From the NCBI GenBank assembly GCA_977020255.1, contig CDROCS010002070.1, forward strand, positions 1 to 64,000: 64,000 nucleotides of DNA, given 5' to 3'. The notes below the pieces were generated by a model. That model was not told the origin of the DNA, made no database searches, and saw nothing but the letters and a program-made list of their open reading frames with translations. This DNA comes from Obrimoposthia wandeli. Taxonomy: Eukaryota. Made by a program: the position numbers and the translations under genes. Of the stretch, positions 38,923 to 42,769 are shown in pieces. Position 1 is the first letter of the stretch. Each line of letters begins with the position of its first letter.

Positions 38923-40179
38923 CTATAATGCTTGAAAGTAACGAATGCGGGCTAATGTTTTTAGACTCTGAAAATGCAGTTGCTGGTACTCCAGCTCTAG
39001 CGCTTGCTCATCCATAAATGCTTTGATTACCTGTTCAAAGTTATTGGTATTGAGCTGATAACCTTGTAAGGATGCTTCGGTATTGCGCTTGGCATGAGGA
39101 AGTAGCGTATCCTGATAGCGTTGCATTCGAGATTCGGTATTCAGAAAATTGGCGATAGCACCGTTTAAAATGCCATTGAATTTAATCAATAGCAGATCTT
39201 TTTCAGCTTTTTTGATGCCCTTGCCCTGAGTGGCCGCGATGACAACTTGGTCTTGGCGATTACCGGTAAATAAGGGGATATTCATGGTTACTGAACCGCT
39301 GAGTAAATCACTGCGCGCCGATCCTGTTGCCATATCTAACGCTTCTCGGTGGCCGTCGCCCACATCGACTTTAAAAGCTGGTTTATAGGATTCATTCGCT
39401 ATTTCGATGGTGTTTTCAGCTACATCAATAGCTTGCTGCGCGGCCAGTACCTGAGGATGGCTTGCTAGAAGTTGATAGTGCACAACCTTACCTTGCTTGG
39501 CATAATCACGGCTTGCTTGCCATTGAGGAATTTGCGAGTCGAGTTGTTCGAAAGCTTGTGAACCAATCCACGCCAGTAGCTGGCCACGTAATGCCTGCTC
39601 TTGTTGGGCGAAGGCCGCAATTTTGTCGTCGAATTTAGCCAGCTCTAGTTCGGCATTGATAAGGTCTTGATTTTGCTTATAACCGAGCTCAAATTGACGG
39701 TAGAGGTTGTCTACATTCAATTTAAATAAGGCTTGGTTTTTTTGCAAAATTTCTTGAGCAAGTTTGGTAAAGCGAATATCAAACCAAAGTTCTCTGATCT
39801 TTAGTTTTAGCTCTGCTTGACGGTTAGCTGACAGCTGTACGCTTTGCAGTGCTTGCAGGTTGAAATTGTTGGCGTTTAACGCGAGTGTATCGCCGCGAGA
39901 AAATTGTTGTGACATACCAATACTAAACTGCGTCATGGGATCGTCAGTTAACGAGAAGCTGTCTATTGGTACATTCGCTAAACCGAGTTTTATCATCGGA
40001 TCAGTCAGTTGTGATGAACTGATCGCTTGCGCTTTAAAACGGGTCTGCTGAGCAGTGTAGATCTGGGCTGTTGGATCGCTTTGCAGGGCGAAGTTTTCCG
40101 CTGCAGATAGCGTTAACAGCTGAGCATTAACATTAAATGTAAATAACGTTAATAGCCCAAAATAAATTTTGGATGGCAT
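38923..40179 (-). CDS. TolC/CusC-family outer-membrane efflux channel
   Basis: Signal peptide; DPMIKLG..NVP, DPMTQFSIGMSQQFSRG, HPQV, SVTMNIPLF; first structural gene before cusBA. Confidence 0.87.
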   Translation of the reverse strand: MPSKIYFGLLTLFTFNVNAQLLTLSAAENFALQSDPTAQIYTAQQTRFKAQAISSSQLTDPMIKLGLANVPIDSFSLTDDPMTQFSIGMSQQFSRGDTLALNANNFNLQALQSVQLSANRQAELKLKIRELWFDIRFTKLAQEILQKNQALFKLNVDNLYRQFELGYKQNQDLINAELELAKFDDKIAAFAQQEQALRGQLLAWIGSQAFEQLDSQIPQWQASRDYAKQGKVVHYQLLASHPQVLAAQQAIDVAENTIEIANESYKPAFKVDVGDGHREALDMATGSARSDLLSGSVTMNIPLFTGNRQDQVVIAATQGKGIKKAEKDLLLIKFNGILNGAIANFLNTESRMQRYQDTLLPHAKRNTEASLQGYQLNTNNFEQVIKAFMDEQALELEYQQLHFQSLKTLARIRYFQAL

Positions 40180-40187
40180 TTTTATTC

Positions 40188-40229
40188 CTTATTAATTGAT
40201 TTTTAAAATAATTAAAATCAACCAATAAG
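40188..40229 (-). promoter_or_regulatory. 16-bp hairpin sequestering the cusC Shine-Dalgarno
   Basis: mRNA CUUAUUGGUUGAUUUU (40229..40214) pairs with AAAAUCAAUUAAUAAG (40203..40188) using two G-U pairs; SD AAGGA at 40190..40186. Confidence 0.7.
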
Positions 40230-40613
40230 AGGGGGACGATATAAGCTTTCTGGATGTTGTTCAGGGAGAGGGGCAGGGAAATACAATACAGTCGTTGTTT
40301 GATCTTGACTGGCAACGATTAATAGATTGGTGCTGATAAAAGGCAGTGAACTGGCGGTGCTACAATCACCATAATTGCACATGTCACAATTACTTTCGCT
40401 CATCGCGGTAAGATGATTGCTGGTTGACGTATCATCCATGTGACAAAGATTGTCTGTGTTCTCGTCTAAATTGCCTCGCATCATTCCCGGCATCATTTGC
40501 ATGTCACACGGAATATTTGCAGACATAACGTGGCTGTTCATTGCCTGAAGAGGTAATGAAAATGAGTTTATTAATAATAATAAAACCAAAGCCAAAGCGC
40601 GCATGAAAGACAT
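40218..40613 (-). CDS. Exported Cys/Met-rich leader protein ending YRPPLIG (DUF2946/CutF-like)
   Basis: Signal peptide, CDMQMMPGMM, CDMCNYGDC, Pro-rich C-terminus PAPLPEQHPESLYRPP. Confidence 0.7.
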   Translation of the reverse strand: MSFMRALALVLLLLINSFSLPLQAMNSHVMSANIPCDMQMMPGMMRGNLDENTDNLCHMDDTSTSNHLTAMSESNCDMCNYGDCSTASSLPFISTNLLIVASQDQTTTVLYFPAPLPEQHPESLYRPPLIG

Positions 40614-40633
40614 CTTTTAATGAAAGTACATGT

Positions 40634-40664
40634 AATTTAAGCATTACCCCTATGGTAAGGTCAA
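40634..40664 (-). promoter_or_regulatory. MerR/CueR-type promoter for leader-cusCBA-b562 operon
   Basis: -35 TTGACC, 19-bp spacer, -10 TAAATT; dyad ACCTTAC-N7-GTAATGC versus CueR box ACCTTCC-N7-GGAAGGT. Confidence 0.7.
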
Positions 40665-40711
40665 GAAGGTAAGGCAAATTTTTGCGGCGCTGTTTATTTA
40701 TACACCGCATA

Positions 40712-40740
40712 TTGACAATATAGCAGGTCTTATAGATAAT
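40712..40740 (+). promoter_or_regulatory. Near-consensus sigma70 promoter for the rightward leader/DUF411 unit
   Basis: TTGACA-17 bp-GATAAT. Confidence 0.6.
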
Positions 40741-40766
40741 TCGTCGTAATTAAGTAAGAAGAGTTT

Positions 40767-41138
40767 GTGATGCTAATACCAAGGCGTGTAATTAAGGTGA
40801 TCTGTCTGTTGCTAGTGAGTATTGTACTCTCGAGCCAGCTTGCCTATGCGCCACTTTCTGCCCATGAACGGTCAAATAACATTGCAGCCATCGATAATGC
40901 GATGCATTGTGATGCCGGGCAGATGATGGCTAACAACGCAAAAGATAACTGCTGTGATTCTTTGGAAAGTAATATTGAAAATAAATGTTGTTTCTCCAGT
41001 GCGACCACAAGTTATGCCATTATTTCATTATCCTCTTTGAATGCACGTCAGCCTTACACACTAAGCCTGATTAATCGTGATCCATCTAAAGCTAGTTTTA
41101 CTATCCCTGCTCTCTTGTATCGACCTCCCATCGTTTAA
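40767..41138 (+). CDS. Second exported Cys-rich leader protein ending YRPPIV (DUF2946/CutF-like)
   Basis: Hydrophobic signal, MHCDAGQMM, NCC..KCC, C-terminal PALLYRPPIV. Confidence 0.7.
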   Translation: MMLIPRRVIKVICLLLVSIVLSSQLAYAPLSAHERSNNIAAIDNAMHCDAGQMMANNAKDNCCDSLESNIENKCCFSSATTSYAIISLSSLNARQPYTLSLINRDPSKASFTIPALLYRPPIV

Positions 41139-41336
41139 TATTCCTTGTACTACACCACACATACGTTTGTTGCTTAATCTATTAATTTCGATATCAATAT
41201 TGATATCGACATAGATGAGGGAACATAGATTAAAAATGTGCAATCGATGTCAAAAATAGACCGATTGAACTAATCTATAAACAAAGTGTGCTGGCTATCC
41301 AAATTAAGTAATACTTCGAAATTTAAGGAATTTAAG
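41134..41336 (+). promoter_or_regulatory. Structured intercistronic RNA with anti-SD/SD long-range pairing
   Basis: UUUAA(U)AUUCCUUG (41134..41147) pairs with UAAGGAAUUUAAG (41324..41336); nested CACAC..TTTGT/ACAAAGTGTG, TTAATCTAT/ATAGATTAA and perfect 22-bp palindrome 41188..41209. Confidence 0.5.
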
Positions 41337-41777
41337 ATGAAAACGATTATCCAATTGATTGCCATATTATCACTCACATTTAGTGCAGTTGCATTCGCCA
41401 AACCGACGATTGAATTATACAAGTCACCGTCATGTGGTTGCTGTGTAGCATGGGCAGATATCATGGAAGAAAAAGGCTATAAAGTGAATGTGCATCATCA
41501 ACGTGATTGGTCAGCGGTGCAGAAGAAGTTCGGCATGCCGAATAATTTACAGTCTTGCCACACGGCGGTTGTTGACGGTTATATGATTGAAGGGCATGTG
41601 CCAGAAAAGGACGTAGCACGTTTACTTAGCGAACGACCGAGTGATATTACCGGTCTTTCTGCTCCAGGTATGCCGCAGCATTCCCCTGGTATGGCTGCAC
41701 CAGGCCAGGACTATAAAGACTTTAACGTTGTTGCGTTTGATAAAAATGGCAACTTGAGCTTATATAAAAAGTATTAA
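41337..41777 (+). CDS. DUF411/CopG-like periplasmic metal-binding protein
   Basis: YKSPSCGCC..W, SCHTA..GY.IEGHVP, APGMPQHSPGM. Confidence 0.88.
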   Translation: MKTIIQLIAILSLTFSAVAFAKPTIELYKSPSCGCCVAWADIMEEKGYKVNVHHQRDWSAVQKKFGMPNNLQSCHTAVVDGYMIEGHVPEKDVARLLSERPSDITGLSAPGMPQHSPGMAAPGQDYKDFNVVAFDKNGNLSLYKKY

Positions 41778-41783
41778 GATAAT

Positions 41784-41818
41784 AAGTCGATAGGGTAGAA
41801 GTGCTGGCCTATCGACTT
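41784..41818. terminator. Bidirectional terminator-like hairpin
   Basis: AAGTCGATAGG / CCTATCGACTT. Confidence 0.7.
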
Positions 41819-41860
41819 CAAGAAAAGTAAACCGCGTTTATCTAAGTAATAATGGCTTAT

Positions 41861-42769
41861 TTACTGTGCCACTTCTTGGTAAACTTTTAAGTCAGTGTGC
41901 AATTCATCTTTCAGCGCACTGAGTTTAAGTGTGCGTATTTTTTTGAATTGATAGACAAACACACCAATGTTAAAGAGAATGCTGATAATACTGATCGTCC
42001 ACATCGCCGCTGGATTATCTGATGATTTAACCGCAAACATCGTGGTATCAACAAATGCAGGAAACGTCATCACAAACATCATCCAGAAACCCAATGTGTG
42101 GGCTCGATGTTGTAACCAAGCGCCTTTTTTGATGAAGAAGGCTGGGATCGTACAAGACAGTAATAAGCATAAACCGGCGTAGAATGAATGGTCTGGTACA
42201 CAGTTATAAACGTAAGCGAAGTTCCAAAGATCATAAGCGATGATCCAGAACCAAAGCATATCTGGCCACACCATATCTTGGTATTTGTCTTTACTAATAT
42301 AAATGCCCACCCAACCACAAATTGTCACGATATTCAAAATACCGGCGATGGCATTCAGGTAATTCCATTGGCCACCAATGATCTCCATACCATCATGCAT
42401 ACCATTGAAACCAGCCGTTTGGAATTCACGCATAACCGCTTCAAAAATATTAAAACCTAAGATGAAGGCAGGGAAAAATAGCAGGTATTTATTCTTTGCA
42501 GCGCCTTTAATGTAACGTAACGCCATAAAGCCAAGGCAACCCGCTAATGCAGAATACGCTTTAACCCATGCAAACCAACTGCCTACCGTTGTGCCTTTAG
42601 CAGCTGTTGTTGGCCATACAAAGAGGGTTAACAGTATTGGTAACACTAAGAAACAAAATCCCGCCGCCCATTTACTACGTCTTGAAATTTCATTAAGCAG
42701 AATTAATGCCAGCGTTACCGTTATCCCAGCTACGACACTATACCAAGGGATTGATTCGAAAAAAAACAT
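41861..42769 (-). CDS. Polytopic membrane protein, DUF5692-like
   Basis: FESIPWYS, WFAWVKAYSALAGC, NIFEAV..EF, DMVWPDMLWFWIIAYDLWNFAYVYNC, WLQHRAHTL; family name from memory; AAGGA RBS. Confidence 0.65.
   Translation of the reverse strand: MFFFESIPWYSVVAGITVTLALILLNEISRRSKWAAGFCFLVLPILLTLFVWPTTAAKGTTVGSWFAWVKAYSALAGCLGFMALRYIKGAAKNKYLLFFPAFILGFNIFEAVMREFQTAGFNGMHDGMEIIGGQWNYLNAIAGILNIVTICGWVGIYISKDKYQDMVWPDMLWFWIIAYDLWNFAYVYNCVPDHSFYAGLCLLLSCTIPAFFIKKGAWLQHRAHTLGFWMMFVMTFPAFVDTTMFAVKSSDNPAAMWTISIISILFNIGVFVYQFKKIRTLKLSALKDELHTDLKVYQEVAQ

What the first reader, a model, noticed from the sequence alone, without database searches (positions are those of the whole stretch)
40767..41339. Second, divergent YRPP leader controls the DUF411 gene through a 200-nt long-range anti-SD fold
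Seen: the back-to-back ORF also has a signal peptide and Cys pairs and ends LYRPPIV. A 13-bp anti-SD (one bulge) starts 4 nt after the second Pro codon and complements the DUF411 SD 180 nt away. Nested stems and a perfect 22-bp palindrome (41188..41209) fill the gap. The two leaders share little sequence except the C-terminal motif and this geometry. Inference: twin arrest-peptide switches gate both arms of one copper island.
Basis: partly seen in the sequence, partly recalled or inferred. Interest (0 to 1): 0.7.

Follow-up and report, generated by a model that had tools for sequence, protein, structure and literature searches.

The report
Copper-sensing leader peptide upstream of copG
A small exported, cysteine-rich gene ending in LYRPPIV is a Moritella member of the published CutF/CopL class of copper-sensing leader peptides; in this strain a deletion has placed it directly before the copper-resistance gene copG (DUF411), and its end can base-pair with the copG ribosome-binding site 180 bases away, a layout that recurs in many other bacteria.

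Summary
The mechanism is a known kind, published for CutF (2023, 2025) and CruR (2022).

- **The leader.** ORF 40767-41138 is conserved in 7 other Moritella genomes (dN/dS 0.2-0.4). It has a signal peptide, an HC/CC/CC cluster 43-56 residues before an invariant LYRPPI end, and an invariant near-consensus promoter.
- **The operon.** It was ancestrally leader, then a cytochrome c-like gene, then DUF411 (CopG). That form survives in 4 Moritella genomes and in 8 genomes of a second family.
- **The gap.** The 198-nt gap in the window is a deletion scar. 41213-41311 is the decayed 3' end of the cytochrome gene. The palindrome lies on the deletion junction and varies between near-identical strains.
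- **The anti-SD pairing in Moritella.** It is predicted firmly (shuffle P about 0.003-0.03), but only here and in M. dasanensis. Two other deletion-bearing Moritella and all 12 leader-cytochrome modules lack it.
- **The same geometry elsewhere.** Of 120 DUF411 loci surveyed, 48 have a PP-tailed leader directly upstream. A 15-sequence clade keeps a long-range helix with compensatory changes.

Verdict: a new variant of a known kind, of moderate interest. The scan had already filed the neighbouring leader upstream of cusC under the same class.

The parts
40712..40740 (+). Promoter of the leader: TTGACA, 17-nt spacer, GATAAT
   Evidence: It matches 11 of 12 consensus positions. About 35 nt around it are invariant in all 8 Moritella copies, while everything further upstream differs.
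40767..41138 (+). Leader ORF (123 aa; probable start ATG 40770), a CutF/CopL-type exported Cys-rich peptide
   Evidence: 8 orthologues, 63-98% identity. dN/dS is 0.21-0.44. The hit to CopL_fam is weak (E=0.0033). hhalign against the LYRPPI family gives 96.7% probability, but over the C-terminal 28 columns only.
40767..40850 (+). Signal peptide (residues 1-28, cleavage after AYA)
   Evidence: Read from the sequence by inspection. Residues 1-33 are almost invariant across Moritella although dS is 0.4-0.7.
40905..40991 (+). Metal-binding candidate cluster: H47-C48, M53-M54, C62-C63, C74-C75
   Evidence: These residues are invariant in 8 orthologues. The Cys lie 43-70 residues before R119, the CC pairs 43-56 residues.
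41118..41138 (+). Codons for Y-R-P-P-I-V and the stop (Pro codons 41124-41129, TAA 41136-41138): the arrest-like motif
   Evidence: LYRPPI is invariant. The same motif ends more than 40 CopL-like leaders of other bacteria.
41129..41147 (+). 5' arm of the predicted long-range helix (anti-SD core 41140-41146)
   Evidence: It is present only in the window and L010.
41010..41185 (+). C-rich, G-poor tract (C>G bubble) straddling the stop codon
   Evidence: Its peak is 32% C against 9% G. That is the top 0.06-2.3% of 78-nt windows in all 8 orthologues. Leaders of the cusC type also have it, so it is a family-wide feature.
41139..41190 (+). Remnant of the ancestral leader-cytochrome intergenic region
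   Evidence: It is collinear with L012-L015 as far as the ATCTATTA.TTTCG stretch.
41188..41209 (.). Perfect 22-bp palindrome on the deletion junction
   Evidence: L010 has extra bases here, L011 has (GAGATT)n, and a contig of run X1 has an ATATCA insertion after 41190.
41213..41311 (+). Decayed 3' end of a deleted 182-aa cytochrome c-like gene (ancestral stop TAA 41309-41311)
   Evidence: blastn against L012 gives 77.5% identity over 129 nt, E=3e-25. The intact gene is present in L012-L015.
41324..41339 (+). SD (AAGGA, 41325-41329) and start codon (41337-41339) of DUF411: the 3' arm of the helix
   Evidence: The SD AAGGAATTTA is conserved in 7 of the 8 Moritella copies; L011 reads AGGGAATTTA. 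Pairing.
41337..41777 (+). copG (DUF411), an exported protein with a CGCC motif
   Evidence: Pfam PF04214, E=1e-25. PDB 6WIS, a DUF411 protein, E=3e-27.

Best explanation
ORF 40767-41138 is a Moritella-specific member of the CutF/CruR/CopL class. These are small Sec-exported peptides with a Cys cluster about 45 residues before a C-terminal R-P-P arrest-like motif, and they act in cis on the gene downstream.

The leader is transcribed from a conserved, constitutive-looking promoter (40712-40740) as the first gene of an operon. That operon was ancestrally leader, cytochrome c-like protein, CopG (DUF411). In this strain a deletion of about 520 bp removed the cytochrome gene. What remains is a 198-nt scar and copG as the next gene.

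In the scar-bearing mRNA, the segment just after the Pro-Pro codons (41129-41147) is predicted to pair with the SD and AUG of copG (41324-41339). A ribosome pausing at or terminating on the end of the leader would cover that arm and free the copG ribosome-binding site.

By analogy with CutF, copper bound by the nascent Cys cluster during export would prolong the pause and raise CopG synthesis.

Shown here: the conservation, the architecture, the deletion, the predicted pairing, and its recurrence elsewhere.
Inferred: arrest, copper sensing, folding in vivo and the direction of regulation.

I put about 0.65 on 'cis-acting leader for copG' and about 0.45 on 'this particular long-range helix works in this strain'.
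For: Architecture:
- Signal peptide, invariant HC/CC/CC cluster and LYRPPI end.
- The last Cys-to-Arg spacing is 43-44 residues, close to the 45 +/- 2 reported for CruR (PMC9426467).
- The stop codon comes 2 residues after PP.
- dN/dS is 0.21-0.44.
- All four rule-based CutF-like criteria of PMC9973294 are met.

Family:
- The LYRPPI end is shared with CopL_fam-like leaders next to cusC-like, TonB-receptor, MerR, heavy-metal-binding-domain (HMBD) and DUF411 genes.
- hhalign gives 96.7% probability.

Operon:
- Leader followed by DUF411 on the same strand in 8 of 8 Moritella copies.
- Leader, cytochrome c-like gene and DUF411 in 4 Moritella genomes and in 8 genomes of a second family.
- No promoter-like or terminator-like site in the gap and no Rfam family.
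- A metatranscriptome contig covers 41254-41404 and others cover 40829-41150. This evidence is weak.

Pairing in the window:
- -11.8 kcal/mol, P=0.003-0.03.
- Core pair probability 0.44-1.0; SD opening from 0.02-0.26 to 0.49 when the arm is removed.

The same design elsewhere:
- L003 has a 10-bp helix between the RPPI codons and the DUF411 SD across 152 nt, with fold z=-4.5.
- 48 of 120 DUF411 loci have a PP-tailed leader directly upstream.
- 25% of 53 pairs reach P<=0.05 in the pairing test.
- Cognate pairs are 2 kcal/mol more stable than non-cognate pairs even without the Pro codons; 0 of 5000 permutations reach this.
- In a 15-sequence clade the long-range helix is 83% paired against 34-56% when slid. 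Four of 8 pairs change on both sides, and 0 of 500 shuffles reach the covariation score.

The neighbouring cusC leader has the short-range version of this design.
Against: - The anti-SD is confined to the window and L010, which are one lineage.
- L011 and L016 also have DUF411 next to the leader. They read ATTTGTT and ATTGCCT in place of the anti-SD, and their SD is predicted open.
- None of the 12 leader-cytochrome modules pairs the stop-proximal region with the next SD (z >= -1). The ancestral module must therefore work in some other way.
- The helix lies in a recent deletion scar, is AU-rich and spans 180 nt. Two substitutions could create its core by chance (P about 0.01).
- YRPP does not fit the RAPP-like consensus (R/Q/H)(A/G/D)(P/G/S)(P/G), and most RAPP-containing proteins tested in that study did not stall (PMC10987492).
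- Pfam DUF2946 gives no hit, and CopL_fam is far below its cut-off.
- I drew the helix in alignment A6 after looking at the sequences, and related loci are not independent.
- The RNA evidence is 151-nt contigs that may be DNA.
Confidence: 0.55

Rival explanations
1. The leader is a true cis-regulator, but it works at the level of transcription, as CruR does. A ribosome held on the RPP motif masks a C-rich Rho-loading tract that straddles the stop codon. When the ribosome leaves, Rho terminates in the long intergenic region. On this reading the anti-SD pairing in this strain is a chance product of an AT-rich deletion scar.
For: - A C>G bubble at 41010-41185 ranks in the top 0.06-2.3% of 78-nt windows in all 8 orthologues. 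Ordinary ORF 3' ends average 5.5 +/- 6 on the same measure.
- In this leader type the bubble runs about 50 nt into the intergenic region: 13-18 C against 5-8 G in 7 of 8 copies.
- The ancestral intergenic regions are long (83-175 nt) and show no SD sequestering. The cruR-bfrG region is 162 nt.
- The promoter looks constitutive.
- The anti-SD is absent from L011 and L016.
Against: - Short-intergenic cusC-type leaders have the same C>G bubble, so it may only reflect the amino-acid composition of the linker.
- No Rho-dependent terminator can be demonstrated by computation.
- The pairing in the window is better than chance, and the same geometry is conserved elsewhere.
- The two mechanisms do not exclude each other.
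Confidence: 0.25
2. The ORF only encodes a small periplasmic copper-binding protein, the LYRPPI end has a role in the mature protein, and copG is expressed by plain read-through from the leader promoter with no switch.
For: - NCBIfam names the family a metal-binding regulatory protein.
- The protein is under purifying selection throughout.
- L011 and L016 do without any SD sequestering.
Against: - The last 6 residues and the signal peptide are the most conserved parts. The stop always follows PP by 2-4 residues, and the Cys-to-R spacing is fixed across very divergent sequences. That fits a nascent-chain function.
- Covariation links the last codons to the next gene's SD in relatives.
Confidence: 0.13
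3. copG has its own regulated promoter in the gap, and the 22-bp palindrome is the operator of a transcription factor.
For: A perfect palindrome is the classic shape of an operator. The gap is AT-rich (30% GC), so weak promoters cannot be excluded.
Against: - No promoter-like site on the + strand in the gap.
- The palindrome lies on a deletion junction.
- It is altered in L010, replaced by a hexamer repeat in L011, absent elsewhere, and carries a 6-nt insertion in another sample.
- It occurs once in the assembly.
- In the ancestral form this DNA was inside or upstream of a coding gene, and copG followed that gene by 25 nt.
Confidence: 0.05

Closest known systems
CutF of Rhodobacter capsulatus (cutFOG operon; PMC9973294 and bioRxiv 10.1101/2025.02.05.636593)
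   Same: A small Sec-exported peptide with a Cys motif and a C-terminal proline motif. It is the first gene of a copper-detoxification operon. A helix shields the SD of the next gene, and a ribosome held at the proline motif would melt that helix.
   Different: - No detectable sequence similarity outside the motif logic.
- The motif is YRPP, not CutF's PPP-containing end.
- The target is CopG, not a multicopper oxidase.
- The helix spans 180 nt, whereas the paper expected stem-loop unfolding to be limited to short intergenic regions.
- Nothing has been tested experimentally here.
CruR (Bp2923) of Bordetella pertussis, DUF2946 family (PMC9426467)
   Same: An upstream ORF with a Cys motif about 45 residues before an R-x-P-P end close to the stop codon. 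It has a long intergenic region and a C>G bubble running from the 3' part of the ORF into the intergenic region.
   Different: - CruR represses an uptake operon when copper is present, through Rho. Here the target is a resistance gene, so the opposite polarity is expected.
- The motif is RAPP there and YRPP here.
- No Pfam DUF2946 hit.
CopL of Xanthomonas / NCBIfam CopL_fam NF033807
   Same: Best family hit, end to end, with the LYRPPI end aligned to the end of the profile. copL is needed in cis for copper-induced expression of the gene downstream, as stated in PMC9973294.
   Different: The score is 18 bits against a cut-off of 40. The downstream gene is copG, not copA/copB.
SecM-secA (and VemP, MifM) arrest-peptide switches
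   Same: An exported arrest peptide whose stalled ribosome opens a structure that hides the SD of the next gene.
   Different: Those sense export activity, not a metal. Their motifs are of the RAGP/RAPP type.

Membership tests
CutF-like proteins (rule-based definition of PMC9973294) | Shorter than 150 aa | tested here: met
   123 aa.
CutF-like proteins (rule-based definition of PMC9973294) | [quoted passage not shown] | tested here: met
   P120-P121 of 123; invariant in 8 orthologues.
CutF-like proteins (rule-based definition of PMC9973294) | N-terminal Sec signal peptide | tested here: met
   By inspection only, because no SignalP is available: RR..K n-region, 11-residue hydrophobic core, AYA before P29. 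Residues 1-33 are nearly invariant.
CutF-like proteins (rule-based definition of PMC9973294) | [quoted passage not shown] | tested here: met
   DUF411 follows 198 nt downstream on the same strand.
CutF-like proteins (mechanism) | mRNA structure that shields the SD of the next gene and lies within reach of a ribosome at the proline motif | tested here: inconclusive
   Predicted firmly in the window and L010. Absent in L011, L016 and 12 leader-cytochrome modules. Conserved with covariation in other leader-DUF411 clades.
CutF-like proteins (mechanism) | Copper-dependent ribosome stalling, acting in cis only | not testable with these tools
   Needs reporter, toeprint or pulse-labelling experiments.
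Pfam DUF2946 (PF11162) | Match to the family HMM above the gathering score | tested here: not met
   No hit at E<=1 for either leader.
NCBIfam CopL_fam (NF033807) | Score at or above the 40-bit cut-off | tested here: not met
   18.1 bits, E=0.0033, covering profile positions 32-128 of 129. Four of 8 orthologues give a weak hit.
LYRPPI-ending CopL-like leaders (alignment A4, built here) | Profile-profile homology | tested here: inconclusive
   hhalign gives 96.7% probability and E=4e-10, but only over the last 28 columns.
CruR-type upstream ORFs (PMC9426467) | Cys motif at a fixed distance (45 +/- 2 residues) from the arrest motif | tested here: met
   43-44 residues from C74/C75 to R119 in all 8 orthologues. 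In 12 other LYRPPI leaders the cluster lies mostly 38-58 residues before R.
CruR-type upstream ORFs (PMC9426467) | RAPP motif | tested here: not met
   The motif is Y-R-P-P. It does not fit (R/Q/H)(A/G/D)(P/G/S)(P/G).
CruR-type upstream ORFs (PMC9426467) | Rho-dependent termination between the upstream ORF and the next gene | not testable with these tools
   Only a C>G bubble can be shown. It is also present in short-intergenic leaders.
CopG / DUF411 (downstream gene) | PF04214 match and similarity to the solved DUF411 structure, with a C-x-C-C motif | tested here: met
   PF04214, E=1e-25. 6WIS, E=3e-27. SCGCC at residues 31-35.

The most novel reading that the evidence does not exclude
Closing a long intergenic region (60-200 nt) with a helix between the codons just after the Pro-Pro arrest site and the SD of copG is a selected, general design of LYRPPI leaders. 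The published view is that such switches need short intergenic regions. On this reading, the window's Moritella lineage rebuilt the design from scratch, by about two substitutions, after a deletion removed the original first target gene. Arrest-peptide switches could then be re-aimed at a new gene very quickly.
Probability: 0.3. Interest if true: 0.6.

Novelty: new variant of a known kind. Interest (0 to 1): 0.42.

Why it matters
Copper-sensing nascent peptides (CutF, CruR) were described only in 2022-2025, in two organisms, and their wider modes of action are open. Four results here bear on that.

1. LYRPPI-type leaders are the commonest upstream neighbour of copG/DUF411 in a 301-genome sample of the GTDB order that holds Moritella.
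2. Many of them close intergenic regions of 60-170 nt with an anti-SD helix anchored at the arrest site. This gets round the 'short intergenic region' limit assumed in the literature.
3. A conserved three-gene module links CopG to a dedicated cytochrome c-like protein. That hints at a redox partner for CopG.
4. Moritella offers natural variants for direct tests: strains with the cytochrome gene, strains with the scar plus the anti-SD, and strains with the scar but no anti-SD.

For this window alone, the leader is one more member of a known class.

Tried and rejected
- **Rfam scan of 40100-41900:** nothing at E<=1.
- **Palindrome as a repeated element or operator:** a single exact copy in the assembly, and not conserved.
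- **Promoter and terminator scan of the gap:** nothing on the + strand.
- **Pairing between the leader's end and the cytochrome gene's SD in 12 intact modules:** none. RNAalifold on the four Moritella intergenic regions gave only invariant local helices and a covariation term of zero.
- **Sensitive search for leader orthologues in 301 genomes of the order:** only Moritella, plus weak hits.
- **Class-wide sample of 401 genomes for the cytochrome c-like protein:** no hit, so uninformative.
- **RNA evidence:** only 151-217-nt contigs from metatranscriptomes, which cannot show starts, ends or co-transcription.
- **Supplementary files of PMC9973294:** no mention of DUF411, PF04214 or Moritella in the text that is held.
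- **C>G bubble as a marker specific to a Rho mechanism:** weakened by the control, because cusC-type leaders have it too.
- **Not used, because the family question was settled by cheaper means:** the large protein searches and structure prediction.
Full report
**1. What is there**

The window is a Moritella contig that sits inside a 1.35-Gb assembly. It is 98-99% identical at this locus to M. dasanensis ArB 0140.

- ORF 40767-41138 (+) encodes 123 aa with a signal peptide, Cys at 48, 62-63 and 74-75, and the end LLYRPPIV.
- After a 198-nt gap comes a DUF411 gene at 41337-41777. It matches Pfam PF04214 at E=1e-25 and the solved DUF411 protein 6WIS at E=3e-27.
- On the other strand, a second small ORF ends LYRPPLIG. 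It precedes a cusC-like gene and a cusCBA-type efflux operon.
- The two small ORFs share only their last 10 residues by BLASTP. Both give weak, end-to-end hits to NCBIfam CopL_fam (E=0.0033 and 4e-6, both below the cut-off). Neither hits Pfam DUF2946.

**2.

The segment 41129-41147 can pair with 41324-41339, which contains the SD (AAGGA) and the AUG of DUF411.

- The core is 7 bp (41140-41146 with 41325-41331). After a one-base bulge come 4 bp, and then 4 more that cover the AUG.
- The duplex energy is -11.8 kcal/mol. Dinucleotide shuffles reach it in 0.3% of trials within the first 45 nt and in 3% anywhere in the gap.
- In partition-function folds of four different contexts, the core forms with probability 0.44-1.0. 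The SD is unpaired with probability 0.02-0.26. It rises to 0.49 when the 5' arm is left out, as it would be under a ribosome.
- The palindrome at 41188-41209 is perfect. The whole 233-nt fold has z=-3.4.

**3. The kind of element is already published**

- CutF of Rhodobacter capsulatus is a Sec-exported peptide with a Cys motif and a C-terminal proline motif. Copper-dependent stalling on it melts a stem-loop that hides the SD of the next gene. CutF-like proteins were catalogued in thousands of genomes, most often upstream of cusC-type genes.
- CruR of Bordetella pertussis has a CXXC motif 45 +/- 2 residues before RAPP. It controls Rho-dependent termination in a 162-nt intergenic region.
- CopL of Xanthomonas is placed in the same network.
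- The leader here meets all four rule-based CutF-like criteria. Its CC-to-R spacing is 43-44 residues. Its motif, YRPP, is not of the RAPP type.

**4. The leader is a real, conserved gene**

- Seven of 13 genomes of the Moritella family carry an orthologue at 63-98% identity.
- Invariant features are almost the whole signal peptide, H47-C48, M53-M54, C62-C63, C74-C75 and LYRPPI.
- dN/dS is 0.21-0.44, with dS up to 0.68.
- Upstream similarity begins abruptly at a near-consensus promoter (TTGACA, 17 nt, GATAAT; 40712-40740), which is invariant in all eight copies. No operator is evident. That fits control after transcription initiation.
- In a 301-genome sample of the order, no other genus has a close homologue.

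**5. The gap is a deletion scar**

- In four Moritella genomes (L012-L015), a 182-aa gene with a signal peptide and a CxxCH motif lies between the leader and DUF411. Its hits to cytochrome c families are weak. The leader-to-cytochrome gap is 142-151 nt, and DUF411 starts 25 nt after the cytochrome stop.
- The same three-gene module, with a YRPPI-ending leader, occurs in 8 of 17 genomes of a second family.
- In the window, 41139 to about 41190 is homologous to the start of the ancestral intergenic region. 41213-41339 is homologous to the last 100 nt of the cytochrome gene plus the spacer (77.5% identity, E=3e-25). About 520 nt are missing.
- The palindrome lies exactly on the junction. It has extra bases in L010, is replaced by (GAGATT)n in L011, and carries an ATATCA insertion in a contig from another sample.
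- L016 lost the gene through two different deletions. The cytochrome gene has therefore been lost at least twice.
- The 'nested stems' are thus remnants, not a conserved scaffold.

**6. Conservation of the anti-SD within Moritella**

- The 7-nt core reads ATTCCTT only in the window and L010. L011 has ATTTGTT, L016 has ATTGCCT, and the four intact operons have ATCAGCCT.
- Duplex energies in L011 and L016 are -5.2 and -5.1 to -7.1 kcal/mol (depending on the SD segment used), close to the shuffle mean of -5.3. Their SD is predicted open.
- None of the 12 leader-cytochrome modules pairs the stop-proximal region with the next SD (z >= -1).
- The back-to-back arrangement with the cus operon is seen only in the window, L010 and L011.

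**7. The same geometry recurs elsewhere**

- Another bacterium in the same assembly (L003) has an LYRPPILS leader followed, after 152 nt, directly by a DUF411 gene. A 10-bp helix joins the R-P-P-I codons to the G-rich SD and closes a nest of hairpins (fold z=-4.5).
- I then surveyed DUF411 genes in the 301-genome sample of the order. 124 genomes have one. Of 120 loci examined, 48 have a PP-tailed ORF under 200 aa that ends within 320 nt upstream on the same strand.
- These leaders are of two types: ..LERPPR.. with intergenic regions mostly of 47-56 nt, and ..SL(Y/F)RPPI.. with regions of about 60-170 nt.
- In 53 leader-DUF411 pairs, the post-arrest segment pairs with the SD segment better than shuffles do. 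Median z is -0.83, and 25% reach P<=0.05.
- With the Pro codons excluded, cognate pairs are 2 kcal/mol more stable than non-cognate pairs, and 0 of 5000 permutations match this. The window is at the 8th percentile and L010 at the 4th.
- In a 15-sequence clade with intergenic regions of 102-139 nt, the last leader codons pair with the GGC-AAAAA part of the SD and spacer. This helix, scored together with a local hairpin on the 5' half of the SD, is 83% paired (34-56% when the partner is slid). Four of its 8 pairs change on both sides, and 0 of 500 shuffles reach the covariation score.
- A second Moritella DUF411 locus (L148, L149) shows the same logic with different sequences.
- Caveats: I drew the helix after seeing the sequences, related loci are not independent, and start codons were chosen by rule.

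**8. Rival or complementary mechanism**

- A C-rich, G-poor tract straddles the leader's stop codon. It ranks in the top 0.06-2.3% of 78-nt windows in all 8 orthologues and extends about 50 nt into the intergenic region. CruR has the same feature.
- The short-intergenic cusC-type leaders have it too, whereas ordinary ORF ends do not. It is therefore a family trait and not a discriminator.
- Rho-dependent attenuation may be how the ancestral leader-cytochrome module works. It may also act alongside SD masking.

**9. Transcription**

- No promoter-like or terminator-like site lies in the gap on the + strand.
- Metatranscriptome contigs cover 40829-41150 and 41254-41558. They are read-length pieces and could be DNA.
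- Co-transcription is likely from the ancestral operon structure, but it is not shown.

**10. Verdict**

- The leader is a new, divergent member of a known class.
- The long-range anti-SD is a plausible working element in this strain (about 0.45). It matches a recurring and apparently unreported variant of the CutF design, but within Moritella it is young and specific to one lineage.
- The palindrome and nested stems are scar tissue.
- The scan had already classed the neighbouring cusC leader in the same way. I re-folded that hairpin (z=-3.3) and agree.

Noticed in passing
window 40634-40664 (- strand): The promoter of the other leader (upstream of cusC) looks like a MerR/CueR-type promoter. 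It has TTGACC (40659-40664), a 19-nt spacer carrying the dyad CTTACC..GGTAAT, and TAAATT (40634-40639). That arm may therefore have a transcriptional copper sensor as well as a leader. The leader studied here has an ordinary 17-nt spacer instead. The resemblance to the E. coli copA promoter is from memory.
   Followed up: partly
L012:798-1346 (-), L021:813-1394 (-), L029-L036: A conserved three-gene module: a YRPPI-ending leader, a 182-199-aa exported CxxCH protein, and DUF411/CopG. It is present in 4 Moritella genomes and in 8 of 17 genomes of a second family. The cytochrome-like protein has no Pfam family above threshold. It may be a dedicated redox partner of CopG. In Vibrio parahaemolyticus, copG and a cytochrome c are both copper-induced members of the CueR regulon (PMC12341060).
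   Followed up: partly
L016 and L011 versus window 41139-41336: The cytochrome c-like gene was lost at least twice in Moritella by different deletions. L016 keeps two internal pieces, while the window and L010 keep only the last 100 nt.
   Followed up: partly
L148 (G008:C1:1845310-1847050), L149 (G003:C102:2035-3775): Some Moritella genomes carry a second DUF411 gene with its own leader, ending ..IPRPPLLSL or ..IPRPPSLSI. The intergenic region is 110-168 nt. The last leader codons are complementary to the GAGATA SD region, with different flanking sequence in the two genomes.
   Followed up: partly
L072-L076, L084, L086, L093-L095, L100, L063: A separate leader type ending ..LERPPR.. sits 47-56 nt upstream of a 143-144-aa DUF411 gene in about a dozen genomes of the sampled order (in L074 and L076 the chosen start gives 138 nt). 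The SD pairs with the codons just after PP in several of them.
   Followed up: partly
window 41150: One metatranscriptome contig (run X5) ends at 41150, 12 nt after the leader's stop codon, and then continues with eight C that are not in the genome. This could be an RNA end or a library artefact. It is a single contig at depth 3.
   Followed up: no
window 40709-40721: The -35 hexamer of the leader promoter lies inside a 13-nt palindrome, ATATTG-A-CAATAT, that is invariant in 8 Moritella genomes. It shares the CAATAT/ATATTG half-sites with the palindrome in the gap. This is probably trivial.
   Followed up: no
G000 contigs C253, C4567, C506, C1802, C6384 (L001-L008): The assembly holds contigs of several other bacteria with 27-41% GC, apparently marine. 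Each carries LYRPPI-ending leaders next to cusC-like, porin-like, MerR, heavy-metal-binding-domain or DUF411 genes. The assembly is therefore a host plus a bacterial community.
   Followed up: partly
window 41346-41373 (- strand): A weak promoter-like site (9 of 12) inside the start of copG points back into the gap. No evidence of use.
   Followed up: no
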